This document shows, piece after piece, positions 22,868 through 63,560 of a DNA stretch of 64,000 nt (positions are counted from its first letter, which is position 1; every line of letters begins with the position of its first letter). The position numbers and the translations under genes are program-made. This DNA comes from Macrostomum lignano (Eukaryota). Under the pieces are notes generated by a model that was not told where the DNA came from, searched no databases, and saw nothing but the letters and a program-made list of their open reading frames with translations. Location of the stretch: assembly GCA_002269645.1 (NCBI GenBank), contig NIVC01001708.1, forward strand, positions 62,001-126,000. Reading direction: 5' to 3'.

Positions 22868-22981
22868 GTTTGTGTTGGGCTTGATCTGCTCCACTATTTG
22901 TTTGCTGTTTGCTTCTTGAACCGATTTATATTCTTTATCCACTCGATTTACTGACCAAGGGGACCCGGTTTCTTTCCTGAC

Positions 22982-23748: not shown

Positions 23749-23808
23749 CTTTTCTACTGGTCTTTTGAATGTTTTTAAATAAAACAGCAATCGTTTCTCT
23801 TTGCCCAG

Positions 23809-43686: not shown

Positions 43687-44279
43687 GGGGGCAGTGGGAG
43701 GCGAGTGATGGAGGGTTAGGAAGGGACGTAAATTCTGTTTGGAGACGCGATCCAAAAGGACATTAAGAAAACCCAGAGAACCTCTGCAATATCGGATGAT
43801 TGAATTGAAAGCAATAAGCTCAAAAACAATTTATTTTGCTGTGCGCTGTTTCCAATGCAGAGGCGGTCATTTTCTTGGATCGATGGTCAGCTATATAAAC
43901 AACAGAAATATGAGCATTCATGTAGTATATTTTCATTAAGATGTTGCAGAGAATCTGTCCAAACTGTAGCGCAATATCCTTTTTTATGAGAATCGTTCTA
44001 AATATCTACTTCGGATGATATCGTTTAACAACTGATGCCGTTCATCATTTCTGTCATTAGGAAAAATGGGATTTTTTCACTGCCAAAGCGGCTGTCATTT
44101 CAAGCGGGAGGATAGCAATAAAATAACAATGACTGCCACAAGAAATCAACATAGATAGGGGTGCTGGGAGAGTGAGAATGAGATGTGGGTGCAAATGTGC
44201 GTGTGCTACATGGTGATGACTCAATCAGTCACGTTCATAGTTCACAGAGTTCTTCTATTAAATCATCTTGGCTGCTCAA

Positions 44280-45422: not shown

Positions 45423-45789
45423 GGCTCTGCGTGTCTCAGCTCTGCAATTTCTGCTTTTGCTGTTCTGTCTGTGCTTGAAATCGGCTTGCCAATCCAATTT
45501 CTGCTGCAGAATAAGTAGCAACTGCTGCGTCCGCCCCTGATTGGTTCGCACGGCCAGCCATCCACCGCCATTAGGGATTAGAGTTAGGGCAGGAGTTTCC
45601 GGCTTTTTGGAAGCCCAAACTCCATTTTTTCCACCCGATTCTCTGCAGCCAGCTTCCTACAGCCCTCCGTAGTCATCCGTCATCATTTGATTTGCCAGAA
45701 AATGGCAGCGAAGATTTCTGGGAATTTCTCAAAATCTACTTTATTCATCCACTTCATTTGGCCCCATTCAGCCGAGAGTACCTTCCCAA

Positions 45790-46010: not shown

Positions 46011-46364
46011 TTAAGCGAGCATCTCGGGCCAGTGCAGAATTGGCAATAAAGGCAGTCAGACACTCGCCGTGATTACGAGTAAGCTGCTCATGGGGATTTG
46101 AGCTGCGGCAGAATTAGGGCAGCTAAGAAATAGGCTTAGCGAAGGAGAGCTCTGTCTTAGAGGCTGCCCCGACAGGGTCACATGGCTGGGCAGCCTAAAA
46201 AGGGACGAACTTTTATAGATTTTTGATTGAGTCGACTCGGAAATCCTTCCTTAGCCTCTGTTCGGCACAACTCTGCGATAAGCCTCCCTTAAACCTGATG
46301 ACGAGATGACGGCAGTGAAGAGGGGCCCACTGAGCTGCGAGTAATAAAGGTGGGAAAAGGGTTC

Positions 46365-46685
46365 GGACATTTTGAGTAGAGTTAGGTGGACATTGTGAGG
46401 AGAGTTAGGTGGACATTGTGAGTAGAGTTAGGTGGACATTGTGAGGAGAGTTAGGTGGACATTGTGAGTAGAGTTAGGTGGACATTTTGAGTAGAGTTAG
46501 GTGGACATCGTGAGGAGAGTTAGGTGGACATTGTGAGGAGAGTTAGGTGGACATTGTGAGTAAAGTTAGGTGGACATTGTGAGTAAAGTTAGGTGGACAT
46601 TGTGAGTAGAGTTAGGTGGACATTGTGAGTAGAATTAGGTGGACATTGTGAGGAGAGTTAGGTGGACATTGTGAGGAGAGTTAGG
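46365..46685. repeat. 20-bp minisatellite (gtggacattgtgagtagagttag-like)
   Basis: Visible tandem array. Confidence 0.93.
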
Positions 46686-46974
46686 TTGATAGCGAGTGCC
46701 TGGGAAATGTTTTATTATTGCTTCATTAATATTAGTTAGCCATGCAGATTTGTCTGTTGCTGCACTTTATTGCGGCAGATGGCTGGAGTGAGTGGCGCTG
46801 ACTGGAACTGATTTGAGCAAGAAATTCGGCTTAATTTGTCTGATAAAGTTGCTCCTGAGGTCAAATCTAATCTAATTATTATCTGGGCATGTCTGAGAAA
46901 CAGGTAAGTGCTCATTTGGGTGCATATTGAGCGTCAATATAGTCTGCTCAAGTTAGATTGACACACTCGCTGAA

Positions 46975-47370
46975 GGACTGGGATTGTGACAATCTGCACT
47001 AAAAGACTGGGATAGTGGCATTCTGCACTAAAATACTGGGATAGTGGCATTCTGCACTAAAAGACTGGGATAGTGACATTCTGCACTAAAAGACTGGGAT
47101 AGTGGCATTCTGCACTAAAATACTGGGATAGTGACAATCTGCACTAAAAAGACTGGGATAGTGGCATTCTGCACTAAAAGACTGGGATAGTGGCATTCTG
47201 CACTAAAAGACTGGGATAGTGGCATTCTGCACTAAAAGACTGGGATAGTGGCATTCTGCACTAAAAGACTGGGATAGTGACATTCTGCACTAAAAGACTG
47301 GGATAGTGGCATTCTGCACTAAAAGACTGGGATAGTGACATTCTGCACTAAAAAGACTGGGATAGTGGCA
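46975..47370. repeat. ~29-30-bp minisatellite (ctgcactaaaagactgggatagtggcatt), array 1
   Basis: About 13 units. Confidence 0.96.
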
Positions 47371-48086
47371 CACACGGACGGATTCAAGAGGCACTAATTT
47401 TATCTTTTCTGTATGAACCAAACCAATATAGCTATACTGATGAATTAAAATTGTTCAATACAATGAACTCCCAAATAGTTGCTAATCCAACTGCCGGCTG
47501 ATTGAAGTGGAGTTAATGCGGTGCAGCACTCTAAACCTGGTTCTGCGCCACTAAACTGTGTGCGTGACGCCCTCGCATTTCCGAGAAAGGATCCATTTTA
47601 AATTCATGCATTAAAACAAATCAATTTAATCTTGCTCTACACTTCCATAATTGATTTAATCTGCCAAATAATTCCACCGAATGTACTTGCGATACTTTAC
47701 CCAATAATTTGCGCATATAGGCCCAACACCGGCCCCCCGTAACTTGGCATGGCAGTTGCTGTAGTTTAAAATTAGAAATAGTATAGAAAATGCAAGCATA
47801 ATTAGCAGATGCAACTGAAATTTATGGTTCTGGAATCGATATACTCGTATGTCACCGAGGCCCCACTTGTGGGCCAATTACGAGTTAGAATCGCTAATGA
47901 TTTAAGGCCGGACAGAATCCACTTTTGCTGCGGCACCACGGTTCTCGCTTGCGGTCTGCGCTGCCACCTTGTGATTGAGCTATCATCATCATCCCCACCA
48001 TCATCATCATCATCATCATCATCATCACCATCATCATCACCATCATCATCATCATCATCACCATCACCATCATCATCATCACCACC
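47371..48086. repeat. Left copy of a long direct repeat flanking the RTE-like LINE
   Basis: Matches 51028-51740 (offset 3657), including the interruption pattern of the (CAT)n. Confidence 0.93.
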
Positions 48087-50695
48087 TTCTTCTTCTTCTG
48101 TCCTTTTATCGCCGGGGGGGGGCGTGGACACGGGCACGTTTATTGAGAGGTGCAGGTACGTCTGTGTCTGGCCATGTTGGTCTTGGCCAGGAGTCTGCCG
48201 CAGCTGGGGCACGGTGCTCTCGTGCTGCGGTAGATCCTCGCGCCCAGTTCTTCCACTCTCGCCGGTTGCTCTGGCAGGTGGGCCTGGACTCTCGTTGGTC
48301 CGCAGGTTTTGCGGTGCCGCGCGAAATTCGACTTGCTCCGCCAGCTCCCGCATTGGGCGCACAGGACGAGGCCTCCAGCTTGCTTTTCTCCCTGGCATCG
48401 TTTCTGGTGGTTTTTCCTGGTTGCTTCTGAGGTGAACGTGGTCAAGCAAATTGGGCATGGTAGCTGCACTCTTTCGAAGATGTGGTGCATGCGCCTCTGG
48501 TGGATCGCCAGTCCTCCTCTTGACGCGCAGGTCTTAGTACACCCCTCGTAGCGGCAGCGGTAACCCGTTAGCTCGGATTCGCCCTGCCCGTCCTCTTCTG
48601 GCGGGGTCTCACTTGCCTCTGGTTGTCGCTTTTTTCTTTTGGCCTTCTCCTCCCGGTCCAGTTCTCTTTCGCGTTTCTTTATTCGTTCTTTCCATGCAGT
48701 CCGGTCCGCCACCATCCTCTCGAGGTCTAGCTCGTCGATCTTCGCCCCGCGGAGCATCTTCTTCCAATATGAGACGATCGTCTGCTTCCGTTTCTTGGCT
48801 TTTCGGATGCCCTCCAAGGTCTTATTCCAGCCTAGAATGCACGTCTTAGCTAGGTTCGAGTCGGGTAGGCAGAGCACGTGGCCCATACGCCTCCAGTGCG
48901 CTGCTTCAATTTTGTTGCTGATACTCTTGATGCCGAGTTCTGCGCGCACGTCCCACATATTGACTCCCTTCTCTTCCATTTCTATGAGCGGTGGTCTTGT
49001 CTTCGCGCTCCAGACGTATCTGTACTTTCTGTCCATTGTTTGCTGCATTCTCTTGACCTCGGATTTCTGGAAGGGTCTCGCTCCGGCGTTAAACAGCATG
49101 GTGCTTTCCACGCAGGCTTCGACAATGCGCGCTTGAGTGCGCTTGCTCAGCCGTGTGCGCCGGAGCATGTTCTTTGTTCCGTGCCATGCTTTGGCTGCTC
49201 GTTTCAGTCTTTGCGTCATATCCTGCTTCCTTCCCAGCCAGGTCCCGAGCATCCGGATGTTTCCGCTATCCTCGGTGCCTAGCGTAGCTCTTTCTTCTTT
49301 ATCGTCGTTTGTCCTTTCTTCAAGGTCTGCCATGGTCTCGATGATGACCCTCGTTCCCTGGTTGACCTCGGCTGCGGTCCCGATGACGGTGGTGTCGTCG
49401 GCGAACAATGAGCTCGTGATCTTGATTTCGACCGTCTCGTCGTTGCGGACACCAATTCTTTGCGGAGGTAGGCAGCTGCCTGGTCGGCGGACCCAGCGAA
49501 TCCCGTGCACTTGTCCTGTTTCCTTCGCCAGAGTGGCTCGTCTCTCTTCAGCTAACCTCATGACTGCCTGGTGGAAGATATTAAAGAGTATTGGCGATGT
49601 GGCGCATCCTTCGCGGAGTCCCCGTTGCGGGTAAAACTCCGTGCTCCACTCATTATCACAAAGCACCTTGTACGCGGTAAATTCATGTAGGTCTTTAATC
49701 TTGTCAATCATCTTTTTCGGCATCCTGTAGTGCTCGAGGAGTTCCCACAGTAGTGGCTTGTTGACTCTCGGGTACGCTTTTCGGAGGTCAAGCAGGACGA
49801 TGTTGGTGTCCGTTTCTGGGTCGTAATCCGGGCTCTCGCGGATTTTTTCGGCGTCCTCGTTCAAACGGAGGATGATTTGGGTCGCATCCATGGTGGATCG
49901 TCCTCGCCGGAAGCCAGCTTGATTTTCATCCATCAGTCCCAGCTTCTCCGCCCAGACGCTGAGTCTCGAGGCAATGATGCGTGCGATTATTCGGCTAAGG
50001 CATGGGAGGAGGCAGACGCCGCGGAAATTATTCAGATTTGCTCTGTCTCCCTTTTTGTGAAGTGGTATGATGATCCCCACTTTTTGATCGTTTTCCCATG
50101 TAGATGCTGGATGTTTCCAGAGTCGCTGGATTTCCTGCTTTAGGACTACTTTTGCTTCGTCGCAGGCGTTCCTGATGTACCGTATTCTAAGATCGTCGAC
50201 TCCTGGTGCTCCATCTTTGATTTTAGCAAGCTCCGTCTCTATCTCAGTGTCTTTCAGTTCACTGGCGAGATCCGCGTTTGCAATTTCAATCTCATTTACC
50301 GGTCTGCTCGTAGGGGGCATCCGGTGGACTAGGTGGAGCATTTCTTCTGGGTTGTTCTCGAAACGTTGGTCTTGGATTTTCGAGAGGTGGTTTTTAAACT
50401 CCTCCGCTGAGAAAAGCGGGAGGATCTTGCTGTTATTGCTGTTCTGTGTGTCGCTTTTACCCATTCTCCTCAGGCAGTCATACATCCCTCCGGTGTTTCC
50501 ACTGTCACAATGCCTTTTGCATTCTTCCGCGATTTCGGTCCACCAGCTCTCTTCCCATTCACGGAGCCTGTTTTTTTGTTGTTTTCTGATGGTTTTTAGG
50601 CGCTCTTCTGCCATTTGTACCCTGCTTACTCGCTCTGGTGTTTCTTGCTCGCGGAGCTGTCGTCGTGCGTTGTTCCTCTGTGCTAAGGCATCTTT
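48087..50695 (-). mobile_element. 5'-truncated RTE-like non-LTR retrotransposon (young)
   Basis: Intact RT ORF; short 3' UTR ending in (GAA)4; 5' end fused to the minisatellite. Confidence 0.92.
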
Positions 50696-50704
50696 TAGTG
50701 ACAT
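48140..50704 (-). CDS. LINE reverse transcriptase with four C-terminal zinc fingers (no APE domain)
   Basis: GAPGVD, QAGFRRGRST, DLRKAY, GLREGCATSPILFN, LFADD; C2H2/C2HC fingers at the C-terminus; 854 aa, uninterrupted. Confidence 0.92.
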   Translation of the reverse strand: MSLKDALAQRNNARRQLREQETPERVSRVQMAEERLKTIRKQQKNRLREWEESWWTEIAEECKRHCDSGNTGGMYDCLRRMGKSDTQNSNNSKILPLFSAEEFKNHLSKIQDQRFENNPEEMLHLVHRMPPTSRPVNEIEIANADLASELKDTEIETELAKIKDGAPGVDDLRIRYIRNACDEAKVVLKQEIQRLWKHPASTWENDQKVGIIIPLHKKGDRANLNNFRGVCLLPCLSRIIARIIASRLSVWAEKLGLMDENQAGFRRGRSTMDATQIILRLNEDAEKIRESPDYDPETDTNIVLLDLRKAYPRVNKPLLWELLEHYRMPKKMIDKIKDLHEFTAYKVLCDNEWSTEFYPQRGLREGCATSPILFNIFHQAVMRLAEERRATLAKETGQVHGIRWVRRPGSCLPPQRIGVRNDETVEIKITSSLFADDTTVIGTAAEVNQGTRVIIETMADLEERTNDDKEERATLGTEDSGNIRMLGTWLGRKQDMTQRLKRAAKAWHGTKNMLRRTRLSKRTQARIVEACVESTMLFNAGARPFQKSEVKRMQQTMDRKYRYVWSAKTRPPLIEMEEKGVNMWDVRAELGIKSISNKIEAAHWRRMGHVLCLPDSNLAKTCILGWNKTLEGIRKAKKRKQTIVSYWKKMLRGAKIDELDLERMVADRTAWKERIKKRERELDREEKAKRKKRQPEASETPPEEDGQGESELTGYRCRYEGCTKTCASRGGLAIHQRRMHHIFERVQLPCPICLTTFTSEATRKNHQKRCQGEKQAGGLVLCAQCGSWRSKSNFARHRKTCGPTRVQAHLPEQPARVEELGARIYRSTRAPCPSCGRLLAKTNMARHRRTCTSQ

Positions 50705-51027
50705 TCTGCACTAAAAGACTGGGATAGTGGCATTCTGCACTAAAAGACTGGGATAGTGGCATTCTGCACTAAAAAGACTGGGATAGTGACATTCTGCACT
50801 AAAAGACTGGGATAGTGGCATTCTGCACTAAAAAGACTGGGATAGTGACATTCTGCACTAAAAGACTGGGATAGTGGCATTCTGCACTAAAAAGACTGGG
50901 ATAGTGGCATTCTGCACTAAAAAGACTGGGATAGTGGCATTCTGCACTAAAAGACTGGGATAGTGGCATTCTGCACTAAAAGACTGGGATAGTGACATTC
51001 TGCACTAAAAAGACTGGGATAGTGGCA
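50696..51027. repeat. ~29-30-bp minisatellite, array 2
   Basis: Same unit as 46975-47370; about 11 units. Confidence 0.96.
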
Positions 51028-51734
51028 CACACGGACGGATTCAAGAGGCACTAATTTTATCTTTTCTGTATGAACCAAACCAATATAGCTATACTGATGA
51101 ATTAAAATTGTTCAATACAATGAACTCCCAAATAGTTGCTAATCCAACTGCCGGCTGATTGAAGTGGAGTTAATGCGGTGCAGCACTCTAAACCTGGTTC
51201 TGCGCCACTAAACTGTGTGCGTGACGCCCTCGCATTTCCGAGAAAGGATCCATTTTAAATTCATGCATTAAAACAAATCAATTTAATCTTGCTCTACACT
51301 TCCATAATTGATTTAATCTGCCAAATAATTCCACCGAATGTACTTGCGATACTTTACCCAATAATTTGCGCATATAGGCCCAACACCGGCCCCCCGTAAC
51401 TTGGCATGGCAGTTGCTGTAGTTTAAAATTAGAAATAGTATAGAAAATGCAAGCATAATTAGCAGATGCAACTGAAATTTATGGTTCTGGAATCGATATA
51501 CTCGTATGTCACCGAGGCCCCACTTGTGGGCCAATTACGAGTTAGAATCGCTAATGATTTAAGGCCGGACAGAATCCACTTTTGCTGCGGCACCACGGTT
51601 CTCGCTTGCGGTCTGCGCTGCCACCTTGTGATTGAGCTATCATCATCATCCCCACCATCATCATCATCATCATCATCATCACCATCATCATCACCATCAT
51701 CATCATCATCATCACCATCACCATCATCATCATC

Positions 51735-51740
<6 letters not shown>
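51028..51740. repeat. Right copy of the long direct repeat
   Basis: ORFs 47656..47877 and 51313..51534 translate identically. Confidence 0.93.
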
Positions 51741-51768
<28 letters not shown>

Positions 51769-51806
51769 TCACCATCATCATCACCATCATCATCATCATC
51801 ATCACC

Positions 51807-51838
<32 letters not shown>

Positions 51839-52110
51839 CATCACCATCATCATCATCACCATCATCATCACCGTCATCATCATCATCACCATCCTCATCA
51901 TCACCATCATCACCATCATCATCACCATCATCATAATCACCATCACCATCATCATCATCATCATCATCACCACCATCATCATCATCATCACCATCACCAT
52001 CATCATCATCATCATCATCATAATCATCATCATCATCATCACCATCACCATCATCATCATCATCATCATAATCACAATCATCATCATAATCACCATCATC
52101 ATCATCATCA
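51640..52110. repeat. (CAT)n/(CAC)n microsatellite
   Basis: Visible tandem repeat. Confidence 0.97.
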
Positions 52111-53170
52111 GCATCGTCTTGTTTCTTCCTTTATCGCCGACGCTTCGGATTGGACAGGTCAGTCTCGTTCGCACACTCTTCTATGTATCGCCATATTTGT
52201 TTTTGCTAATAGTCGTCCGCAAATCGGGCATTTTCCTTTCTCGCTGCGGTACACTCTCGCGACTGCCATGATGTGGACTTGCTTGACGGGACTGCCAGGC
52301 TGGCATGCCTTTGCGTGTCTGGCGAAATTTGACCTGCTCTGCCATCGTCCACAGCTTGTGCATTGTACCCTCCCGCTCTCGCTACGTCCGCCTCTGCACC
52401 ACTTTGCGCGGTTCTTGCGTGTGGCTTCTGAGTTGAACGTCGCGTTGCATCCGTTAAATTTGAGTGTTACCTTTGCCTCCCTGTGATGAATCATTCTCTG
52501 ATGTATTGCCAGTCCTCCTCGTGATGCACAGATCTTGTTGCACCCTTCGTATCGACATCGGTAGCCGGTTAGTTCTGTTTCTCTGTCTTCTTCTCTTTCT
52601 GCCTGTGCCCGGGTCCGCGTCTTGGTACCCTCTCGTGCACCCCTTCTCTTCTTCTTGTTTCGCTTGGTCCTCGCGTTGTTTTACAGGTGCTTGCCAGAGC
52701 TCCCTGTCTGTTACCGTTCTTTTGATATCAGTCTCCTTGAGGCCTGCTCTTTTAACTATTTTCTTCCAGAAGGACACGATTGTCTGGTTTCGTAGTCTCG
52801 CCTTCCTCACTCCTTCCAGGTTCTTACTCCATCTCGTGATGCAGATTTTAGCTAGGCTGGTGCCTGGGTTGTTTGATACATGACCCATCCGTCTCCAGTG
52901 CGCTTTTTCTGCTTTCCATTCGATGCTGTCTATGTGGAGTTCTTTTCATACATCCCACATGTTAACGCCTTTTCCTCCATTCGATCAGGGGTGATTTAGT
53001 CTTGCTGCTCCATATGTATCTGCACCTCCTGCCCATTGCCTTCTGCATCTTTTTTAGTTCAGATTTGTAGAACGGGCGGGCTCCCACGTTGAAAAAGAGC
53101 GTACTTTCTACACACACACACGCTTCCAAAATCTTCGCTTGGGTGCGCCGGTGGAGTTTTGTTCTTCGCA

Positions 53171-54436
53171 GTATTTCAAAAGTTCGTAGAAAAGCAGTCT
53201 TTGCATAAAGCTATAGCCTTGAAACTTTTCACAAATACTATTTCATATATCCAAAGCCTACAGCTAAATTTTCAGCAAAATTAATTGAAATGGCCACCAG
53301 AAATCTGCAATAAAACTCTGAACTCCCCACTGCGTTTACTGCGTTCTCCAGAAATGAAGCTGCTGCTGAGATGAAGACTGTACTGCAAGATGAAGCTCCA
53401 TCCCTCAGCACTGTGCACAAGTGGTTTGGTCGCTTTAGAGCCGGCCATTTCAATCTGGCTGACAAGCCAAGAGAAGGTCGTCCAAGAACATCAACAGATT
53501 CCTTAAATGTGGCTGCTGTGCAGTCGGCGTTGAACGAGAATGCAAGACTGACGATTGAGAGGATGGAGGAGAGTTTGGGCATTGATGCCACATCGATTTG
53601 GAGGATCTTGCACGAAGATCTTGGTGTCACCAAGAAAGCTGCCAAATGGGTGCCACGAATCCTCTCGCCTGAGCAGAAGCAGCAGAGAATTGATTTCTGC
53701 AGAAATTTCCTGGATCAGTTCAAAGATGGAGCATCTGCGAATTTCCAGAACATCGTCACAGGTGATGAAGCCTGGTTCCATCAGTACGACCCGCCAACTA
53801 AATCACAGTCGATGGTTTGGTCACTGAAAGGAGCCCCACCTCCCCAAAAGGCGGAGCGGGTGAGGTCAGCTGGGAAAATCATGTTCGCGATTTTCTTCTC
53901 GCCCAGAGGCATCGTAGCCTCAGTGCCTGTTGAGCAAGGCCGCACTGTGACCTCTGATTGGTACGTGACCAGCTGCTTGCCCGCTGTGTTCAATTCCATC
54001 GCAGCTGGCCGCGGCAAAGCTGAGCTACGCCGCTACTTCCTGCATCACGACAACGCACCTGCACACACAGCGAACAACACAGTGCAGCACATTCATGCTT
54101 CTGGCATCAAGCTGCTGAGCGCTCCGCCTTATTCACCGGATCTGGCGCCGTGCGATTTCTGGTTATTTTCGAAAATCAAGCAGCCGCTGCGTGGAAAGTT
54201 GTTTGAGACTCGAGATGAGCTGATTTCTGCTGTGAATGAGCAGCTCAACTCCATTGAAAAAGCTGATTTTAGGGGTTGCTTTGATAGCTGGCTGCAGCGC
54301 ATGCGAACGTGCATAGAAATTGGTGGCGATTACGTTGAGAGATCAGATTGAGATGCTGATTAATGTGTCGCAACCCGCTTTTTGATATCTGCTTGCTTTC
54401 TATCACTTTCTACGAACTTTTGAAATACCCCTCGTA
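53171..54436 (+). mobile_element. mariner DNA transposon
   Basis: TIR gtatttcaaaagttcgtagaaa at left (outer bases deleted) and tttctacgaacttttgaaatacccctcgta at right. Confidence 0.93.
53371..54351 (+). CDS. mariner transposase (D,D34D), N-terminus damaged
   Basis: WVPRIL, IVTGDEAW, HDNAPAH, YSPDLAPCD with 34 residues between the last two Asp; in-frame stop upstream of 53371. Confidence 0.93.
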   Translation: MKTVLQDEAPSLSTVHKWFGRFRAGHFNLADKPREGRPRTSTDSLNVAAVQSALNENARLTIERMEESLGIDATSIWRILHEDLGVTKKAAKWVPRILSPEQKQQRIDFCRNFLDQFKDGASANFQNIVTGDEAWFHQYDPPTKSQSMVWSLKGAPPPQKAERVRSAGKIMFAIFFSPRGIVASVPVEQGRTVTSDWYVTSCLPAVFNSIAAGRGKAELRRYFLHHDNAPAHTANNTVQHIHASGIKLLSAPPYSPDLAPCDFWLFSKIKQPLRGKLFETRDELISAVNEQLNSIEKADFRGCFDSWLQRMRTCIEIGGDYVERSD

Positions 54437-56347
54437 TTCTTTAAACTCCGTTTCAAGCTTGAGCTGCTCTCTTCATTCTCTGTGTTATACGCTGGTATCC
54501 TCTGTACTCCCAAGCCACGTTCCTAGCATCCTGATTTTGTCGTCTTTTTTGTCCTGAGGGTTGCCTTCTCTTCTTTGTCTGTATTTGTTCTCTTCTCTTG
54601 TTCGCCCATCGTTATCTCGATTGTGTCTGTTCCTGATGCTATTTCTTCCGACATGCCTATCAAAGTCATATCGTCCGCGAAATGTGAGTTCGATATGATG
54701 GTGTGTTGGTCGTTTCCTCGTTGTACTCGTATCGTTCTGTTCTTTTGGGCGGTAGCGCGTGTCCTGGCCTATGGACCCACTTCACTCCGTACTGCTTTCC
54801 TTCCTCTCTTGCTTTTTTCGCCCTTTTTCTTCTGCCAGTCGCATGACTGCCTGATGGAATATATTGAAGAGGATAGGTGACGTCGCGCATCCTTCTCTGA
54901 GCCCCCGTTGGGGGTAGAACTCCGTGCTGGTTTCCTTGTCGCATCGCACCTTGTTCGTGCAAGTCCTTGCTGAGAATATTGTTGAGAATGCTCTCTTCTA
55001 GGTATCTCCAAAGCACTGGTTTGTTCACTCTCTGGTAGGCTTTTCTTAGATCCAATAGCGTAATTGCTGTAATCATTCTTCCACTGAAATCTGGGCTGCC
55101 TCATTTTCTTTGAGTCTCAGGATTACTTGGGTGGCGTCTAGGGTGGATCGTCCGCTCCTGAAGCCTGCTTGTGTATCTTTGAGGCGTTCTGTCCATTTGC
55201 TCAGTCTGGTTGCTAGGATTCGCTAGGTTGCTAGGACTCTGCTTACCATCGACAGGAGGCACACTCCCCTGAAATTGTTCATGTTAGCTCTGTCGCTCTT
55301 CTTGTGTAGCGGTACAATGATTCCTGTCTTGTCGCTTGATCTCCACCCGTCTCCGGTTGCTGGAGTCTTCGACAAGCGGTGAATTTTCATCTTCAGGTGC
55401 GTGTTGACTTCTGTACACGCGTCTCTGATATAGCGCATTCTGACGCCATCCTCTCCAGGTGCTCCGTCCTTTATTTTGGCTATCGCTATATCAATTTCAT
55501 CACCGGTTAGTTCCTATGTCAGATCCTTGGTCGCTTCTTCCCTTGTTTGTTCGTCGAGCTCCGGTTTCTGGATCTGTTTGAGTAGTGCATACATTGTGTC
55601 TGGGTCATTTTTGAATCTAACGGCTTGGATGGCTTCCAGGTGATCCCTGAAAACTTCCGCCGAGAACAGTGGTACGGACTTGCTGTTGTTACTGTTAGGT
55701 TGGCAGTTTTTCCCAATTTTCCTCTGACATTCATACATTCCGCCTACGTCCGCAATGTTCTGCCACCATTCCTCTTCCCATCTCTGTATTGCTTCTTTGT
55801 GCTTTTCTCTGCACTCTTTGAGTTGTTCTTTTGTCTGTTCCCTCTCCTCTTCTTGTCTTGCCGTTGCCTCAGGTGTATTGTTCATTCCTGATTCCTTCGT
55901 GCTGTTGCGCCTGGCCAGGGCCTTTGCGATTTCCTTGTTTAAACTCAAGTTCTTTCTCGTGTCCGATCATCCACTCATTCGTTTTGTCTTTTCTTCGTCC
56001 CGCATATCGTCTCTGATTTTCCGGTCCTATCTTTTCATGTTTTCTTCTGTTAGAGTCCTGAAACCTTCTTTGGTTTCTGAGTCGCGTAGGCGTTCCCATA
56101 CGATTTGCTTTTCTTGTGTTTTTGGGTTTCTTCTGGGTATCGCCCTGTGGCGCTCGCAGAAATTCCTGTGTAATGTCACAACTTTCGCTGTAAGGTGGTC
56201 GGATAGGTTTTGCTCACTGTTGGTAAATCACCATGACCATCAATTTGTCAATTTTAATAGCTAGAAGTCTGTTATCCGGTCGTTTTCGCGCCATACCGTT
56301 CACGCGGTGTTGTTCAGCAATATCCCTACTTTGTAGGAGTAGACTAC

Positions 56348-56529: not shown

Positions 56530-57636
56530 TCTCTCCCCCAAAGCAAAATAAAAGTCCAATACGAAAGGGTTTAAAATTTCATTGCGAAAATTGACGAGAA
56601 AGTTGTAAAGGATTAAAAAAATTAATTAGTAAAACAGTAGCAAAAATTTCGATTTTTGAACGTTTAAATACTTAACCAATCAAAGAATGCCGATCTTAGA
56701 CAGCCTCCCGGCTCAGTTCGAATCAAGTCACTGCTTGTAGCAGACGGGCCGCTTTGCTGTCTTGGGATGAGGCCTCTGCGCAATCGGACCGTCGTTGGCC
56801 GGATTTGCCTCCGTCGCCGGCGCCCCCGGCCGCTGATCGCCGTCCAGCTCGTCAAGGTCCCAGGGGCACTCACGCAGCGGCTTCGCCTCAGTCACATGCC
56901 GCCGAATGACTGCCGTGCCGCGTTGCAGCGTCAGGGTGCCGCCGCTGACTGCTTTGACATGCCAAGGCCGCGGGTCGAACGGACAGCGCAGCTTGGCCTT
57001 GCCGCGGTTTCTGAGCAGCACGCGGGCGCCTGCCAGGATGCCGTGTGGCGCAGCCGATCGCTGCGTGTCGGCCGCCTTGCGCATCGCCTGCTTGTAGCCG
57101 CAGCCGTGGCGCTGCAGCTGCCGTCCGGAGCTGCCGGTTTGCTTTGTCAGGCCAGATGGCAGGATGTCGCCGGTCTCTCGGTTGAACATGAGGTCGTTGG
57201 GCGTGCGGTCGGTGCCTCGGTGCACAGAGTTGCGGTATCCGAGCAGCCACTCGTGGATCGCCCGCCGCCAGTCGTTGCCTTCGGCCGTGGCGGCGTTGAT
57301 GGCCTTGTTGAGGCTGCGGTTGAAGCGCTCCACCTCGCCGTTCGCCGCCGGGTAGAACGGGGTGACCCTGCGCTGTCGAACCCCGAGGCCGTCCAGAAAC
57401 ACACTGAATTCCTCGCTCGTGAAGTAGGTGCCGTTGTCCGTAGTGATCTGCTGCGGCACCCCGAAGCGGCTGAATGATGCCATGACGCAGTTGATGACGC
57501 TGGCGCCATCACCACGTAGAGGTCCTGGAAGGCTTGCTGCTGCTCGCGGTCCCAGACGAATTCCTGGCTTTTCCGTGTTAGTCGCCTCAGCGGCTCCGCT
57601 TTGTTGGCAAGGTGCGGCATGAACTTCTCGAGGTGA

Positions 57637-57904
57637 TTGGCCAGGCCGAGGAACGACCGGACTTCCTTGGCAGACTGTGGATCCTTGAATGCTTGCAGCT
57701 CCGCGATTTTCTCTTCTGATGGCTGGATGCCGAACTTGGAGAGCGTCATAGCCATGAACTTGGCCTTGCCGATGCCCCAGTGGCACTTGCTGGTATTCAG
57801 GGTGATGCCATTGTCACGCAGTCTGGTCAGGCAGGCTGCCACGTGTTCTTGGTGAACTTCAGGGCCCTGACTGGATGATGATGTCGTCGTGGATCCACTT
57901 AACA
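57637..57904. repeat. 268-bp target-site duplication, left copy
   Basis: Identical by eye to 61512-61779; ORFs 57637..57855 and 61512..61730 translate identically. Confidence 0.95.
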
Positions 57905-60900
57905 GCTTGCATCTTTGCGAGCAAAACGCTCAGTGCGTGGCTCAGATCGGACCTGTCCAACAGGGACATCTGCGTCATCCAATCCGAGGACCTTCTTCCT
58001 GGGAAGACCACCCTCATTGCCTCGGTTTACCTACCAGGCGATGCTGCGGTCGTCCCCAGAGCCCTCGCTACGCTGGTAGAGCTCTGCTCTGCCAAAAACT
58101 ACGAGCTCATGGTTGCCGGCGACATCAACGCCCACCACACTCACTGGGGCAGCACTGGCATTAATCAGAGAGGCGAAGACCTCCTAGCCTACGTTGCCTC
58201 TACGACCCTCGAGTTCTGCAACTCTGGGTCCACCCCTACCTTTGACAACGGACGGTGGTCGGAGGTGATCGACGCTACGCTCGCAACGCCCAGACTCTAC
58301 CAGAGTATTGGAGCGTGGCGGGTGCTTCCAGTGTCCTCACTCTCGGATCACAAGTTCATCTCCTTCAACCTAATGGCCGCGCGTAGCGCAACTCGTGTTA
58401 CGTGGAGACGGAACGCCAGAAATACGGATTGGGAAACCTTCGGGCTCGCCCTGAAGGAATTCCATCGGTCTCCTGGCCAACCATCCACGATCACGTCGTG
58501 CCGAGAGGCGGATGAGTGCGCGACTGTTTTGACAGAGACGCTAACCGCCGCCTTTGAGGCGTCCTGCCCTTTAAAAGCCTATAAAGGGAAAAAATCGGCG
58601 CCGTGGTGGAATCCCGAGCTCGGCAACCTCCGTCGCAGGGCTAAGAGACTCCACCGCAGAGCAACTAAAACTAAGAGCCCTGCAGACCAAACCGCCTATC
58701 ATGAAGCAATTCATGAGTTTAAAAGGAAGGTTAGGAATGCAAAGGCTCAAAAATGGCGACAATACTGTGAGGAGCTAGAGGGCTCACGCCCCACCTCCAG
58801 AGTTGTGAAAGCGCTCACGCTGGACAAAATGTCTAAGCTCTCCTCGGTCAAACGCACCGACGGTACGTCCATGGACAACCCAGGGGAAACGCTTGATGTA
58901 ATGCTCACTGCGTTTTTCCCCAACGAGCCAGCTAACCAGACCACTCCGGATCACTCGGAGGGAGGTCACGCGCTGGCTGCCTCTATCATCACGGAGGACC
59001 GCATTGTGAGAGCGGCAAATTCCTTCAAGCCTTTCAAAGCCCCAGGACCCGACGGCATTGTACCGGCCCTTCTAAGAGAGGCGGTTAAATGCCCAGGCTT
59101 CCTGCGCAAACTTTGCAGCCTTCTTCGGGCATGCATCACGCTTGGTTATGTCCCACAGGCTTGGACCGAGGCAAAGGTGATCTTTATCCCTAAGCCAGGC
59201 CGCTCGGACTACCATTCTATCAAATCCTTCAGACCGATCAGCTTGACCTCCTCCCTGGTCAAGCTGATGGAGAGACTGGTGCTTTGGCGCCTTCTCTCTG
59301 TTGAGCTGAAGAACAAACCTCTCAGCGAGAACCAGCACGCTTTTCGGGCGGGTCGCTCCACTGAAAGCGCGCTGCACGTCCTGGTCGATAAACTCGAGAA
59401 GGCCGTGCTTGGTAATGGCTTTGCTCTGGGGATCTTCCTGGATATCATTGGCGCCTTCGATAACGTCCTCTTTGAGGCGTTCCGAAGAGCTCTTTGTGAG
59501 AGGCAAACGCACTCACATCTCACCAGATGGATCATGTACATGATCAGCCATCGCACGGCCACCGCCAGTCTGCTGGGCTACCAGAGGACGGTCCCCGTCT
59601 GCAAAGGTAGCCCGCAAGGTGGGGTGCTGTCTCCAGTTCTCTGGAATATGGTCATCGATGAGCTCCTCCGGGATGTTCGGCCAGACCCCATTCTGAAAGT
59701 TGGATATGCGGACGATGTCACCGCGGTGGCATCTGGTCCGTCCCCTGATACCCTCAGGGACCTTCTTCAGAACTTCATCTACGCTGCTGAGCAATGGGCG
59801 GACCGCTGTGGTTTAAGGCTCTCTGAGACTAAGACCGCAGCGATCATGTTCACCAGCAGGACCAAGTGGCAGATTCGGCCGCTCACGCTTTACGGAAGGG
59901 AAATCCCCTTCTGCAAGCAGACTAAATGTCTGGGTATTACCCTGGACCACAGGCTGAACTGGTCACCCCACGTTCAAACAAAAGCCAAAAAGGCCTTCGC
60001 AGTCCTCGCGCAATTGCGCAGGGCTGTCGGCACCACCTGGGGGCTCACCCCCAAGCGCCTCTGGTGGATCTACACTGCAATGGTTAGGCCCGCTATCTCG
60101 TATGGCGGCCTGATCTGGGCTAGCGCCCTGCAGATAAAGACCTGTCTAGAGGCTCTCAGGAGAGCGCAAGGGCGCGCTTGTCGCACGATCATGAGCGCCC
60201 CTCCGTCTGCTCCCTACGATGGCCTCAACGCCTTCCTCAACATTCCTCCGCTGGACATCTTTGTCCGCAGGGAAGCGGCTAAGACTGCCCGCCGTCTAGC
60301 TGACGCTGGCATTCGAATCCAGCCCCATAGGGCCATGGCTAAGCGCAAGCTTCTGCCCCACGCTGACCTCTGCCTCAAGGACTTGAGAGACAGCGGCGGG
60401 CTCCACGTCCTATCTGACGGCGAACCCCGCACTCTCAACCTCTTTCAGCGCTACAAGGTCACCATCCCCTCTAGGGATGCTGCCAATGACCACTGGAATT
60501 TCCAGGAGGTCCATTGCTACACGGACGGATCCATCAAAGACGGTCGCGCCGGCTTTGGGGTCTGCATCATCATCAACGGCCGCGTAATTGCCACGCATGC
60601 CCAGCACACTGGTAGACTCTCCACAGTCTTCCAGAACGAAGTCCTTGCCATCAGCTCTTGCGCTGCAGAGCTGAACGCCAAGGTTACGAGAGGAAAGACT
60701 ATTGTCATCCACTCTGACAGCCAAGCGGCCTTACAGGCCCTTTGCCACACCACAACGAACTCCCGGACAGTCGCCGACTGCGCCCGGCAGCTCAACCTCC
60801 TGGCCAGAAGCAATACTGTCAGGCTGAAGTGGATCCCAGGGCACGCAGGGTTTCCGGGGAACGAGCTGGCAGACACCCTCGCCAAGAGGGGCGGCTCTGG

Positions 60901-61399
60901 CTCTTTCTTCGGCCCTGCCCCCCTGGTCCCTATGCCCTTGACAGTCATCAATCGTCAGATCGACGACTGGGCTGACTCCCTCCACAGGGACAGATGGGCG
61001 GGCACCCAAAACTGCCGGCAATCTCGTGCCGCGGTTCCTTGCCCGTCTCACAGGCTCAGAAACATCCTTCTGAACCAGAATCGGAAGGATATTCGAGCCC
61101 TTGTCATGACCCTTACCGGCCATGGCTACCTCGCCAGGCACTGCTTCCTCCGAGGCGACCTCGAGAGCGAAATTTGCCCCTTTTGCGAGTGCGACAAAGA
61201 AGATGCTCAGCACTTTGTCTGTCACTGCCCTTTCTTTAACAGAGACCGGCTACGCTACCTCGGGCCGAACCCGTCCATTGACGAGGTCTGCCAGCCCGAC
61301 AGCATCCCACGGCTCATCCAGTTCCTTCGGGCGACTAGACGAGCCAGTTTCTTCCCAACGGAAGATCACGCTGCAGGACGGACCGGCGGACCACCCTGA
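57875..61399 (+). CDS. LINE ORF2: partial APE, reverse transcriptase, RNase H, zinc knuckle
   Basis: GDINAHH/SDH, KAPGPDG, QGGVLSP, YADD, WGLTPKRLWWIYTAMVRP, YTDGS...WIPGH...GNELAD, CPFC..H..C; 1174 aa, uninterrupted. Confidence 0.95.
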   Translation: MMMSSWIHLTACIFASKTLSAWLRSDLSNRDICVIQSEDLLPGKTTLIASVYLPGDAAVVPRALATLVELCSAKNYELMVAGDINAHHTHWGSTGINQRGEDLLAYVASTTLEFCNSGSTPTFDNGRWSEVIDATLATPRLYQSIGAWRVLPVSSLSDHKFISFNLMAARSATRVTWRRNARNTDWETFGLALKEFHRSPGQPSTITSCREADECATVLTETLTAAFEASCPLKAYKGKKSAPWWNPELGNLRRRAKRLHRRATKTKSPADQTAYHEAIHEFKRKVRNAKAQKWRQYCEELEGSRPTSRVVKALTLDKMSKLSSVKRTDGTSMDNPGETLDVMLTAFFPNEPANQTTPDHSEGGHALAASIITEDRIVRAANSFKPFKAPGPDGIVPALLREAVKCPGFLRKLCSLLRACITLGYVPQAWTEAKVIFIPKPGRSDYHSIKSFRPISLTSSLVKLMERLVLWRLLSVELKNKPLSENQHAFRAGRSTESALHVLVDKLEKAVLGNGFALGIFLDIIGAFDNVLFEAFRRALCERQTHSHLTRWIMYMISHRTATASLLGYQRTVPVCKGSPQGGVLSPVLWNMVIDELLRDVRPDPILKVGYADDVTAVASGPSPDTLRDLLQNFIYAAEQWADRCGLRLSETKTAAIMFTSRTKWQIRPLTLYGREIPFCKQTKCLGITLDHRLNWSPHVQTKAKKAFAVLAQLRRAVGTTWGLTPKRLWWIYTAMVRPAISYGGLIWASALQIKTCLEALRRAQGRACRTIMSAPPSAPYDGLNAFLNIPPLDIFVRREAAKTARRLADAGIRIQPHRAMAKRKLLPHADLCLKDLRDSGGLHVLSDGEPRTLNLFQRYKVTIPSRDAANDHWNFQEVHCYTDGSIKDGRAGFGVCIIINGRVIATHAQHTGRLSTVFQNEVLAISSCAAELNAKVTRGKTIVIHSDSQAALQALCHTTTNSRTVADCARQLNLLARSNTVRLKWIPGHAGFPGNELADTLAKRGGSGSFFGPAPLVPMPLTVINRQIDDWADSLHRDRWAGTQNCRQSRAAVPCPSHRLRNILLNQNRKDIRALVMTLTGHGYLARHCFLRGDLESEICPFCECDKEDAQHFVCHCPFFNRDRLRYLGPNPSIDEVCQPDSIPRLIQFLRATRRASFFPTEDHAAGRTGGPP

Positions 61400-61511
61400 C
61401 CGGCCCCACGCCTCTGCCTGTCTGCGGGCCTTCAGGGGCTAGCGGAATGGGCGACCCTCGCCTCCCCGCTGTGTCTACGGACCACCCTGCAGCTAAGTCA
61501 AGTAAGTCAAG
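57905..61511 (+). mobile_element. 5'-truncated LOA/Lian-like LINE inserted in the Gypsy RT
   Basis: Partial APE, RT, RNase H and CCHC; 3' tail (TAAGTCAAG)2; flanked by 268-bp direct repeats. Confidence 0.93.
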
Positions 61512-61779
61512 TTGGCCAGGCCGAGGAACGACCGGACTTCCTTGGCAGACTGTGGATCCTTGAATGCTTGCAGCTCCGCGATTTTCTCTTCTGATGGCTG
61601 GATGCCGAACTTGGAGAGCGTCATAGCCATGAACTTGGCCTTGCCGATGCCCCAGTGGCACTTGCTGGTATTCAGGGTGATGCCATTGTCACGCAGTCTG
61701 GTCAGGCAGGCTGCCACGTGTTCTTGGTGAACTTCAGGGCCCTGACTGGATGATGATGTCGTCGTGGATCCACTTAACA
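61512..61779. repeat. 268-bp target-site duplication, right copy
   Basis: Begins right after the LINE tail and ends at the same ccacttaaca as the left copy. Confidence 0.95.
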
Positions 61780-63125
61780 CCAGTGAGGCCTTCCAGCACT
61801 TGCTGCATGACACGCTGCAGGATCTGCAAGGCGGAGGCGAATCCCATGCTCAGGCGTGTCAGCTGACGCATCCCTCGGGGCATTGAGAAGACCAAGTACT
61901 TGCGGCTGTCCTCACTGATCTCAATTTGATGAAACGCCTTGAAGATATCGAGCTTGGTGAAGATTGTCGACCCCGTCATGTCACTGGTAGCTTCTTCAAA
62001 AGTCGGGATTTGGTGTCGCTGCCTCAGGGACGCCTTGTTAACGTCTCGCAGATCCTGGATGATCCTCAAGGTCTTCCCGTCCTCTTTCGGTACCACGACG
62101 ATGCGACTGACCCATGGCGTGGGGCATTCTACTGGCTGGATGATCTGCATGCGCTCTTGCTCGTCCAGCTCGCGGTCCAGCGCCTCCCTGAGATGTACTG
62201 GTATATTCGAGAGGGCGGATGACAGACGGGCCTAGCGTCGGGCTTGATACGAGCTCGTACCAATCTGAACTAAAACGCCCTTGACCTTGCCGAGGCCTTT
62301 GAAGAGCTCCGGAAATCGCTTGGCCAGCGCCAGGGTCTCTGCGTTCTCCGTCTCGGCTGCTGCGATCGCGCGAACCTGAGGCCCCAATCTCAGAAGGCGG
62401 AGTGAGGTCGATGTCTCTCGTCCCAGGATGTTGACGCCGTCGCCGGGGACGACCATGAAGCGAACCTCCTGGCTGTCCTGGCCGGTTGTCACCTGCAGGC
62501 TGCAGGCTCCCAGGATGCTGAGCGGTTCTGAAGAGCGGAAGGCGAATACCTTTGTGCGAGTTGTCTGCAGCGGCGGGGGTCGCGGAAGTTTCCACCAGGC
62601 TCTCTCTGTCAAGATATTGCAATCAGCCCCGCTGTCGACCAGGACTTCCAGCTGCGTTGAGTCGACGAGCACTGTTGTGCGGGCGCCGGCTGTAGCCGTC
62701 ATGGTGGCCGCCACGGTCAGACAGAAGATGCTGTCCTCCGGCTCTGAGTTGTTGCTGTCGGCCTGCAGGGCACGGACGGCTTCCAACGGCCGGGAGAGAC
62801 AGGCCCTCGCCAGGTGAGTTCGCTTGCCGCAGCGCTCGCACGTCTTACCTCTGGCTGCGTTGCATTTGCGATGGCCCGGGACTCCGCATCTGATGCACGT
62901 GGCTTGCTTACCTGGCTGGTCCCTTGACTAGGCGCTCTGCCGATGAGGCCGCTGCACCAGTGTCTCGAAGCCAAAGTCGCTGTACCGCCGCCTCGTTAGA
63001 TTCCATGTGGCTTGCCTGAGTCTCTGCTGTCTCCATGGCTCTGGCCACCCGAAGCGCCTGCTCCAGGTCGACATTTTCGATCGCTAGCAGCTTGCGGCGA
63101 AGCTGCTCTGAACTGCAGCCGGTGA

Positions 63126-63560
63126 TTTTGGTGGTGGTATCTTCTGATTCCATTTGACACGTTGTTCAGTTCAGTGAATAATGTAGCGTTCCAGTGCGAA
63201 CTTAACCATTTGTCCGAAACGTCCGGCTCCGATGTTCGCTCTTTGGGCATTCCATGTCTCAATTTTTACTTTCTCCTCTTGCCATTTCCTTCTTGCTGTT
63301 ATAAGTCTCGTTTTTGTTCTTGCTTTTCGTTTTTCATTGCCTTTCCTCTTCCTTCTTTCTGATCTGGCTTTCTTCTGGGTTTCGCTCCTTGGTCCGGGGT
63401 TCTTTTCTTCAGGCAGCTTCAGGTTGATGGCGTTTTTATTGCTCTTTTTCTCTCTTTTTTGGTTTTTTTATGGCTCTTCTTTCCTCTTTTAATCCTCACT
63501 GACATCTTTCACCATATTTTGTTTTTAGAGGTGCACAAGTTGGTTACTTCCTGTCTTGGA
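63126..63560 (-). mobile_element. 5' part of the old RTE-like LINE (APE N-terminus)
   Basis: Minus translation KVKIETWNAQRANIG resembles the APE TWN motif; same strand as 52111-56347. Confidence 0.6.

What the first reader, a model, noticed from the sequence alone, without database searches (positions are those of the whole stretch)
57637..61779. LOA/Lian-like LINE flanked by a perfect 268-bp target-site duplication
Seen: 57637-57904 and 61512-61779 are identical by eye. They abut the LINE 5' truncation point and its (TAAGTCAAG)2 tail exactly. Removing the LINE plus one copy restores continuous Gypsy RT sequence (GLTGVKWIHDD...SFLGLANHLEK). Knowledge: TSDs from target-primed reverse transcription are usually about 5-20 bp; TSDs of hundreds of bp are recalled mainly for RTE elements such as C. 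elegans Rte-1. Inference: second-strand cleavage occurred 268 bp from the first nick in an RNase H-bearing clade not known to me for this. The intact ORF and identical repeats imply a recent event.
Basis: partly seen in the sequence, partly recalled or inferred. Interest (0 to 1): 0.82.

Follow-up and report, generated by a model that had tools for sequence, protein, structure and literature searches.

The report
LINE insertion with 268-bp target duplication
A young, 5'-truncated jumping gene (a LINE with an RNase H domain, most likely in the flatworm Macrostomum lignano) sits inside an old Gypsy-type element between two identical 268-bp copies of the target, a rare but already documented outcome of LINE insertion, and an unrelated LINE 10 kb away shows the same thing on a ~1-kb scale.

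Summary
Positions 57637-57904 and 61512-61779 are 268/268 identical and extend by no further base on either side. They abut a 3,607-bp non-LTR element exactly, at its 5' truncation point and after its (TAAGTCAAG)x2 tail. Removing the LINE plus one copy restores a colinear LTR-retrotransposon RT sequence.

The geometry is that of a target-site duplication from target-primed reverse transcription, with the second-strand break 268 bp from the first nick. No rival explains the native 3' end, the 5' truncation and both exact abutments together.

- The ORF is open, but the copy lacks ORF1 and the first 63 codons of the endonuclease.
- The LOA/Lian label could not be tested.
- TSDs over 100 bp are documented beyond RTE: L1 (up to 10% of HeLa events, kb-scale in NER-deficient cells), rotifer R9 (126 bp) and Chlamydomonas Dualen (median 900 bp).

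A second, unrelated young LINE in the window (48087-50695, minus strand, RTE-like) is flanked in the same way by about 1,049 bp. This hints at a host-level tendency.

Other copies of the family could not be fetched, so whether it habitually makes long TSDs is untested. A 36%-identical relative has an ordinary 11-13-bp TSD.

Verdict: real, a new member of a known kind, of moderate interest.

The parts
57637..57904 (.). Upstream (5') copy of the 268-bp target-site duplication. It is antisense Gypsy-type RT sequence and ends exactly at the LINE 5' truncation point.
   Evidence: 100% identical to 61512-61779 with no extension on either side
57905..61511 (+). 5'-truncated non-LTR retrotransposon, 3,607 bp. 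Partial APE endonuclease, RT, RNase H, C-terminal CX2CX7HX4C motif, 112-bp 3' UTR and tail.
   Evidence: Pfam Exo_endo_phos_2, RVT_1 and RNase_H. PDB sequence hits to R2 and L1 ORF2p and the TRAS1 endonuclease. Residue 1 aligns to residue 64 of the full-length relative P0001.
57905..61399 (+). Open ORF2 remnant, 1,164 codons plus stop. As listed, the ORF starts at an ATG at 57875 inside the duplicated target.
   Evidence: 99% identical to LINE-derived parts of Macrostomum lignano UniRef gene models (P0004).
61400..61493 (+). 3' UTR with a block conserved among relatives (GGCGGAATGGGCG...CCCTGCAGC).
   Evidence: alignment with L001 and with window 29038-29170 on the minus strand
61494..61511 (+). 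Tail, (TAAGTCAAG)x2. This is the native 3' terminus and the site of first-strand priming.
   Evidence: L001 ends ...CTGCAGCTAAGTCAAAG with one unit. Window 29038-29053 (-) ends CTGCAGTTAAGTCAAG.
61512..61779 (.). Downstream (3') copy of the 268-bp target-site duplication. It starts directly after the LINE tail.
56728..63500 (-). Host element: a degraded LTR-retrotransposon pol (protease, RT, integrase; RNase H region missing; frameshifts) into whose RT the LINE inserted. Outer limits are approximate and no LTR pair lies in the window.
   Evidence: Pfam RVP, RVT_1 and rve on minus-strand ORFs. Restored reading frames.
47042..51740 (-). Comparison case, not part of the finding. A second young 5'-truncated LINE (48087-50695, RT plus C2H2 fingers, (GAA)n/(GAT)n tail) lies between direct repeats 47042-48086 and 50696-51740 (~1,049 bp) with the same TSD geometry.

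Best explanation
This is a single retrotransposition event of a young, multi-copy, RNase H-bearing APE-type LINE, most likely in Macrostomum lignano, into the RT region of an old Gypsy-type element. The element's endonuclease nicked the strand complementary to the LINE sense strand between ...GAGGTGA and TTGGCC... (window 57636/57637). The freed 3'-OH primed reverse transcription at the (TAAGTCAAG)n end of the RNA. Reverse transcription or joining stopped early, 63 codons into ORF2. The other strand was broken, or an existing break was used, 268 bp downstream (57904/61780 in empty-site terms) rather than the usual 10-20 bp. Its 3'-OH primed second-strand synthesis on the cDNA. Strand-displacement synthesis and fill-in then copied the 268 bp lying between the two breaks on both sides, which produced two identical copies. 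Shown directly: both exact junctions, the native 3' terminus, the 5' truncation, the colinear restored empty site, the perfect identity, and the existence of near-identical copies elsewhere. Inferred: the order of the nicks, which enzyme made the distant break, and the strand-displacement step.
For: The repeats are perfect and end exactly at the junctions. Neither the 268 bp nor the LINE occurs anywhere else in the window. The LINE domain order is APE-RT-RNase H. The 3' terminus is shared with the 61%-identical full-length relative L001 and with a third fragment in the window, so the insert ends at the element's native 3' end, as TPRT requires. The 5' end falls at residue 64 of the full-length ORF2, a typical 5' truncation. 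Several M. lignano gene models contain 99%-identical pieces, including the upstream APE part and ORF1, which indicates a young multi-copy family. An independent second LINE in the same window has the same geometry with ~1,049 bp, of which 718 consecutive bases are identical. That target is unique sequence plus arrays, not a dispersed repeat. Long TSDs are an established TPRT outcome: over 100 bp in up to 10% of L1 events in HeLa and a median of 1,495 bp in NER-deficient cells (PMC5223499), and a median of 900 bp for Dualen-4b and 126 bp for R9 (PMC9977147).
Against: Only one insertion of this family could be examined. No reads, empty allele or other genomic copies were available, because the M. 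lignano genome is not in the searchable contig collections. A 36%-identical relative, L002, has an ordinary 11-13-bp TSD, so a long stagger is not a general trait of the wider group. Both the host element and the LINE are repeats in a genome reported as hard to assemble (PMC5730564).
Confidence: 0.8

Rival explanations
1. Assembly artefact. The 5' junction (T-end|LINE) and the 3' junction (LINE|T-start) come from two different LINE insertions in two different copies of the Gypsy family, and the assembler switched loci inside the near-identical LINE.
For: Both the LINE and the host element are multi-copy. The M. lignano assemblies are PacBio-based, redundant and difficult.
Against: This needs two same-orientation insertions of the same LINE family 268 bp apart in two copies of one element. 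One would have to be truncated exactly where the assembled copy starts, and the host copies would have to be 100% identical over the shared 268 bp. The whole structure is only 4.1 kb, well within single long reads. The second case in the window lies in non-dispersed sequence, where such switching is not possible.
Confidence: 0.07
2. 5' transduction plus homology-mediated joining. A truncated LINE already sitting at the T-end position in another Gypsy copy was transcribed from upstream antisense Gypsy sequence. The chimeric RNA retrotransposed into a homologous Gypsy copy 268 bp upstream, and the cDNA end annealed to the homologous target, leaving a scar-free 5' junction that mimics a TSD.
For: An ATG inside the duplicated segment (57875) opens the reading frame, so a chimeric transcript is conceivable. 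The host is a repeat family.
Against: It requires the new nick to fall by chance within a few hundred bp of the homologous site in a genome of roughly 500-760 Mb (sizes from PMC5730564). It also requires 100% identity between donor and target Gypsy copies. It cannot explain the second case, whose target is not a dispersed repeat.
Confidence: 0.04
3. Replication-based tandem duplication (template switching of the FoSTeS/MMBIR type) of the 268 bp, with a templated insertion copied from a LINE elsewhere at the duplication junction.
For: Tandem duplications with inserted sequence at the junction are a known class of structural variant (from my own knowledge).
Against: The insert ends precisely at the LINE's native 3' terminus with its repeat tail and is truncated only at the 5' end, in sense orientation. 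A random template switch would not select those end points. The same coincidence would have to occur twice in 64 kb.
Confidence: 0.04

Closest known systems
Human L1 insertions with large (>100 bp) TSDs in cultured cells (Gilbert 2002/2005 and Symer 2002, as cited in Servant et al. 2017, PMC5223499)
   Same: An APE-type LINE, TPRT, 5' truncation, and otherwise ordinary junctions. The duplicated target runs from hundreds of bp up to kb. The attributed cause is a second-strand break far from the first nick.
   Different: L1 lacks RNase H in mammals and has a poly(A) tail. Large TSDs make up 10% or less of events in repair-proficient cells and become the majority only in NER-deficient cells. Here the frequency in the family is unknown.
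Dualen-4b_cRei in Chlamydomonas mutation-accumulation lines (PMC9977147)
   Same: Duplications flank de novo LINE insertions on both sides, are read as TSDs, and are hundreds of bp long.
   Different: Dualen carries both RLE and APE endonucleases, which the authors suggest as the cause. More than half of its insertions show duplications over 50 bp, with a median of 900 bp. The element here has only an APE.
R9 of bdelloid rotifers (126-bp TSD; Gladyshev and Arkhipova 2009, as cited in PMC9977147)
   Same: A long TSD of defined geometry.
   Different: From my own knowledge, R9 is an R2-like, RLE-type, 28S rDNA site-specific element with a fixed TSD length. The element here is APE-type and inserted into a non-specific site.
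C. elegans Rte-1 (Youngman et al. 1996)
   Same: As I recall, it was described with direct repeats of about 200 bp at its ends. The second LINE in this window is RTE-like (single ORF, very short 3' UTR, a (TGA/GAT)n tail as described for RTE in PMC1852546) and has a ~1-kb flank.
   Different: I could not read the primary paper here. RTE-clade TSDs are otherwise mostly 7-15 bp (Ichiyanagi and Okada 2008, as cited in PMC6007223). The element in the finding is not RTE-like, because it has RNase H and a relative has a separate ORF1.
I-factor/LOA/Lian-type RNase H-bearing LINEs with ordinary TSDs
   Same: The domain order APE-RT-RNase H-Cys motif, a separate ORF1 in the full-length relative L001, and a short repeat-unit tail.
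   Different: The one relative I could measure (L002, 36% identical, (TAA)n tail) has an 11-13-bp TSD. The 268-bp event is more than 20 times longer.

Membership tests
Non-LTR retrotransposon (LINE) inserted by TPRT | ORF2 with an APE-type endonuclease and a LINE-type reverse transcriptase | tested here: met
   Pfam Exo_endo_phos_2 (2e-19) and RVT_1 (1e-31). PDB sequence hits to R2 and L1 ORF2p and the TRAS1 endonuclease.
Non-LTR retrotransposon (LINE) inserted by TPRT | Insert ends at the family's native 3' terminus and is variably 5'-truncated | tested here: met
   The terminus CTGCAGCTAAGTCAA(A)G is shared with L001 and with window 29038-29053. The copy starts at residue 64 of the full-length ORF2.
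Non-LTR retrotransposon (LINE) inserted by TPRT | Direct repeats of target DNA abut both ends, and the empty site reconstructs | tested here: met
LOA / Lian clade | RNase H domain downstream of the RT | tested here: met
   Pfam RNase_H at residues 868-996, E = 3e-14. This feature is shared with the I, Tad1, Ingi, Nimb and Outcast clades, so it does not discriminate.
LOA / Lian clade | RT-domain phylogeny places the element inside LOA (RTclass1-type reference set) | not testable with these tools
   No Repbase or reference LINE RT set is available. The database relatives carry no clade names.
LOA / Lian clade | Clade-typical ORF1 | tested here: inconclusive
   The ORF1 of the relative L001 (525 aa) has no Pfam hit.
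LINE insertions with extra-long (>100 bp) TSDs | Flanking duplication over 100 bp with TSD geometry at a bona fide LINE insertion | tested here: met
   268 bp
LINE insertions with extra-long (>100 bp) TSDs | The structure exists in single DNA molecules (spanning reads or PCR), and an empty allele has one copy | not testable with these tools
   No reads or alternative alleles were available. The window's protein and the M. lignano models are not on record in the contig collection.
LINE family that habitually makes long TSDs (like Dualen-4b or R9) | Most or many copies of the same family carry long TSDs | not testable with these tools
   There is only one full copy in the window. A 113-bp 3' fragment at 29038-29150 shows no recognisable TSD. 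The L001 contig does not reach the 5' flank.

The most novel reading that the evidence does not exclude
In Macrostomum lignano, resolution of LINE insertion often uses a second-strand break hundreds of bp to about 1 kb away, whatever the LINE clade. Both young LINE insertions in this 64-kb window, from unrelated clades, carry 268-bp and ~1,049-bp duplications. That would point to a host-side determinant, for example weak flap or NER-type processing, as in XP-deficient human cells where L1 TSDs reach a median of 1.5 kb. It would also make LINEs a steady source of sub-kb to kb local duplications in this duplication-rich genome.
Probability: 0.25. Interest if true: 0.65.

Novelty: new member of a known kind. 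Interest (0 to 1): 0.38.

Why it matters
TSD length records where the second DNA strand is broken, which is the least understood step of LINE integration. One 268-bp TSD in an RNase H-bearing APE LINE adds a clade and a host (a flatworm) to a short list: L1, R9, Dualen and Rte-1. Two unrelated LINEs in one 64-kb window both show it. If that reflects the genome as a whole, M. lignano would be a natural system in which long-stagger TPRT is common. It is transgenesis-capable, which would allow tests of whether host repair factors rather than the element's endonuclease choose the second break. It would also identify LINEs as generators of short local duplications, and of their later loss by repeat recombination. 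As a single event it remains an anecdote.

Tried and rejected
1. I tried to fetch other copies of the family. An exact look-up of the window ORF and of the 99%-identical model P0004 found nothing. The closest relatives with DNA were L001 (61% identical, a 6.5-kb contig that does not reach a 5' flank, no flank repeat) and P0002 (no DNA).

2. I tried distant relatives on long contigs. L002 gave a clean 11-13-bp TSD. L003 is an inverted-duplicated context with no readable TSD. L005 (Chilo suppressalis) did not translate to the query and I did not pursue it.

3. I searched the window for further copies by tail and 3' UTR motif. This found one old 3' fragment at 29038-29150 (-) with no recognisable TSD, and a chance-level hit inside a 33-bp array at 22981.

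4. I looked for a shared nick-site motif between the first-strand site (GGCCAA|TCACC on the primed strand) and the second-strand site (TTAACA|CCAGT). The similarity is too weak, and two or three sites are too few, to claim anything.

5. Microhomology at the 5' junction could not be assessed, because the family's nucleotide sequence upstream of the truncation point is not available. Only the amino acids ...NQPPR|ACIFASK are known, from P0004.

6. The clade could not be assigned by Pfam or PDB. Both resolve only to 'APE LINE with RNase H'.

7. For the second LINE I considered whether the repeated (GAT)n-U-array block could be the element's own long 3' UTR. I rejected this. The older related LINE3, next to the other copy, is only 36-60% identical in protein, whereas the blocks are identical. 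The interruption pattern of the microsatellite is also copied.

8. A literature search for LINE TSDs in Macrostomum found nothing relevant. The primary Rte-1 paper is not in the library.
Full report
**Observation.** The two stretches 57637-57904 and 61512-61779 are identical at all 268 positions, and the identity does not extend by a single base on either side. Self-BLAST of the window finds no further copy of the 268 bp and no second copy of the intervening element. The left copy ends ...GGATCCACTTAACA and is followed directly by GCTTGCATCTTTGCG (57905). The intervening element ends ...CCCTGCAGC-TAAGTCAAG-TAAGTCAAG (tail at 61494-61511), and the right copy, TTGGCCAGGCCG..., follows directly. 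Deleting 57905-61779 gives a minus-strand translation that runs colinearly through an LTR-retrotransposon RT...GLTGVKWIHDDIIIQSGP, then ...QGPEVHQEHVAACLTRLRDNGITLNTSKC...SFLGLANHLEKFMPHLANK.... There is a one-base frameshift inside the duplicated segment, present in both copies. Further on, the RNase H region is missing, so the host element was already dead.

**What the insert is.** From 57905 one frame is open for 1,164 codons to a TGA at 61397-61399. Pfam finds Exo_endo_phos_2 (residues 37-152), RVT_1 (428-678) and RNase_H (868-996). A CX2CX7HX4C motif follows the RNase H domain. PDB sequence hits are to R2 and L1 ORF2 proteins, the TRAS1 endonuclease and bacterial RNase HI. The best named database relatives are Macrostomum lignano gene models. 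These are artificial fusions that contain 99%-identical pieces of this ORF2 (P0004: 524/529 identical). They also contain the part missing here (...INLQHCVAASVNLM...LVQEPW...NQPPR|ACIFASK...) and ORF1-like sequence. The window therefore most likely comes from M. lignano, and the family is young and multi-copy.

A 61%-identical full-length relative on a Logan contig (L001) has a 525-aa ORF1 and a 1,232-aa ORF2. The window ORF starts at residue 64 of that ORF2. The window copy thus lacks the 5' UTR, ORF1 and the first 63 codons of the endonuclease. The ATG at 57875 that opens the listed ORF belongs to the duplicated target. 'Intact ORF' should therefore read 'open but 5'-truncated and not autonomous'.

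The 3' end is native. L001 ends ...CCCTGCAGCTAAGTCAAAG before unrelated sequence. A short third fragment in the window (29038-29150, minus strand) shares the same 3' UTR block and ends CTGCAGTTAAGTCAAG.

**Interpretation.** A sense-oriented insert that keeps its native 3' end, is cut short at the 5' end, and is bracketed by direct repeats of a target that reconstructs when the insert is removed, is the signature of target-primed reverse transcription. The only unusual feature is the 268-bp distance between the two target breaks.

I infer the following sequence. A nick between ...GAGGTGA and TTGGCC... on the strand complementary to the LINE primed cDNA synthesis at the repeat tail. The opposite strand was broken 268 bp downstream, after ...CTTAACA. 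Its 3'-OH switched onto the incomplete cDNA. Strand-displacing synthesis through the cDNA and on across the 268 bp, plus fill-in of the displaced strand, duplicated the interval. The junctions are shown directly. The order of events and the agent of the distant break are inferred.

With 0 differences in 268 bp, the 95% upper bound on divergence between the copies is about 1.1%. Together with the 99% identity to other copies, this supports a recent event.

**Rivals.**
- *Assembly switch.* A switch between two LINE-bearing Gypsy copies would need two same-orientation insertions 268 bp apart in identical host copies. The whole structure is only 4.1 kb.
- *Chimeric transcript.* A Gypsy-LINE transcript re-inserting into a homologous Gypsy copy would need an extremely unlikely target hit.
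- *Replication-type duplication.* A tandem duplication with a templated insert would not end at the LINE's native terminus.

None of these can explain the second case described next. I give them about 0.15 in total.

**A second case in the same window.** Direct repeats 47042-48086 and 50696-51740 (~1,049 bp) bracket 48087-50695. That interval is almost entirely an 854-codon minus-strand ORF with a LINE-type RT (RVT_1; PDB hits to L1 and R2) and four C-terminal C2H2-like fingers. Its relatives are single-ORF APE+RT+zf-C2H2 LINEs of 1,200-1,350 aa. They have a very short 3' UTR carrying a conserved GGCGATAAA(A)G motif and a (GAT)n tail. The literature describes these features as typical of RTE elements (PMC1852546). 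I did not test the clade.

In the LINE's orientation, the upstream repeat copy is cut off inside a 29-bp minisatellite exactly at the LINE's 5' end. The downstream copy begins inside a (GAT)n tract directly after the LINE tail ...(GAA)4. That (GAT)n tract is the tail of an older, related LINE (52171-55921), which is only 36-60% identical in protein and is itself interrupted by a mariner-type transposon. The new element therefore nicked a (GAT)n tract, as its own tail would favour.

Between the two copies, 718 consecutive bases are identical. The only differences are A-run indels and unit variants in the minisatellite, plus one 3-bp microsatellite indel. The length is uncertain by multiples of 29 bp because of the array. 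This is the same TSD geometry, in a different LINE clade, and in a target that is not a dispersed repeat.

**Context from the literature.**
- L1 TSDs are usually 5-30 bp. Events over 100 bp occur in up to 10% of recovered HeLa insertions. In NER-deficient cells TSDs range up to 5.3 kb, with a median of 1,495 bp. The authors propose that a distant, unrelated nick is then used for second-strand priming (PMC5223499).
- In Chlamydomonas mutation-accumulation lines, more than half of Dualen-4b_cRei insertions carry flanking duplications, with a median of 900 bp. The same paper cites 126-bp TSDs for rotifer R9 (PMC9977147).
- TSD lengths are otherwise reported to be clade-specific and short. RTE TSDs are mostly 7-15 bp and L1 TSDs 7-18 bp (Ichiyanagi and Okada 2008, as cited in PMC6007223).
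- I found no report on LINE TSDs in Macrostomum.
- I could not check the Rte-1 primary paper, so its ~200-bp repeats are my recollection only.

**Relatives.** The one relative whose TSD I could measure is L002. It is 36% identical, has a (TAA)n tail, is 5'-truncated, and is nested in a Pao-type element. Its TSD is an ordinary 11-13 bp, ACGTTCAACGT. A long stagger is therefore not a general property of RNase H-bearing LINEs. Whether it is habitual in this particular family could not be tested. The M. lignano genome is not in the accessible contig collections, and the window holds only one full copy.

**Verdict.** It is a new instance of a known, uncommon outcome of TPRT, in a clade and host where it had not been noted, rather than a new mechanism. 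The most interesting lead is that both young LINE insertions in this window, from unrelated clades, have TSDs of hundreds of bp. That makes a host-level cause worth a genome-wide census. I put its probability at about 0.25.

Noticed in passing
window 47042-51740 (LINE 48087-50695, minus strand): A second young, 5'-truncated LINE (RT plus C-terminal C2H2 fingers, short 3' UTR with GGCGATAAAAGG, (GAA)n/(GAT)n tail, RTE-like) is bracketed by ~1,049-bp direct repeats with TSD geometry. 718 consecutive bases are identical, and the differences lie only in a 29-bp array and a microsatellite.
   Followed up: partly
window 52171-55921 (minus strand), with 53371-54351 (+): An older, degraded LINE of the same RTE-like group (36-60% aa identity to the young one, with stops and frameshifts) has a (GAT)n tail expanded to about 570 bp (51549-52118). 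It is interrupted by a Tc1/mariner-type transposase ORF (DDE_3, HTH_48). No long TSD is visible for it.
   Followed up: partly
window 29038-29150 (minus strand): A fragment of about 113 bp shares the conserved 3' UTR block and the CTGCAGTTAAGTCAAG terminus of the LOA-like LINE group. It is either a severely 5'-truncated copy of a sister family or a SINE-like passenger using the same tail. No TSD was recognisable.
   Followed up: partly
window 57875-57904: An ATG inside the duplicated target (antisense Gypsy) is in frame with the truncated ORF2. This creates a chimeric 1,174-codon ORF (MMMSSWIHLT|ACIFASK...) that could encode an RT/RNase H protein without a functional endonuclease.
   Followed up: no
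window 1-7000 vs 7315-17900: A local segmental duplication. Blocks 1-2269, 2557-4448, 4439-5400 and 5393-6990 recur 7.3-10.6 kb further on at 90-96% identity, with different minisatellite content between them.
   Followed up: no
window 6475-7300, 15073-16400, 19456-21600, 22961-23750, 26611-27330, 39299-40540, 41109-43780, 46296-46755: The window has an unusually high density of minisatellite arrays, with units of 8/12, 23/51, 14, 33, 28, 16, 45 and 23 bp. This fits the simple and tandem-repeat-rich M. lignano genome described in PMC5730564.
   Followed up: no
window 44280-45551 (-) and 22175-22954 (+): Two candidate host coding sequences lie between the repeats. One is a 423-aa ORF with a rhodopsin-family 7TM domain, and the other is a 259-aa ORF matching an amino-acid permease.
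   Followed up: no
L004 2944-3394 and 7428-7569: In an environmental eukaryote contig, a 45%-identical relative of the RTE-like LINE sits directly behind a (GAT)n tract that shares the interruption pattern of its own (GAT)n tail (96% over 138 bp). Either the elements insert head-to-tail into each other's tails, or this is a microsatellite-borne TSD of about 140 bp. The two cannot be told apart.
   Followed up: no
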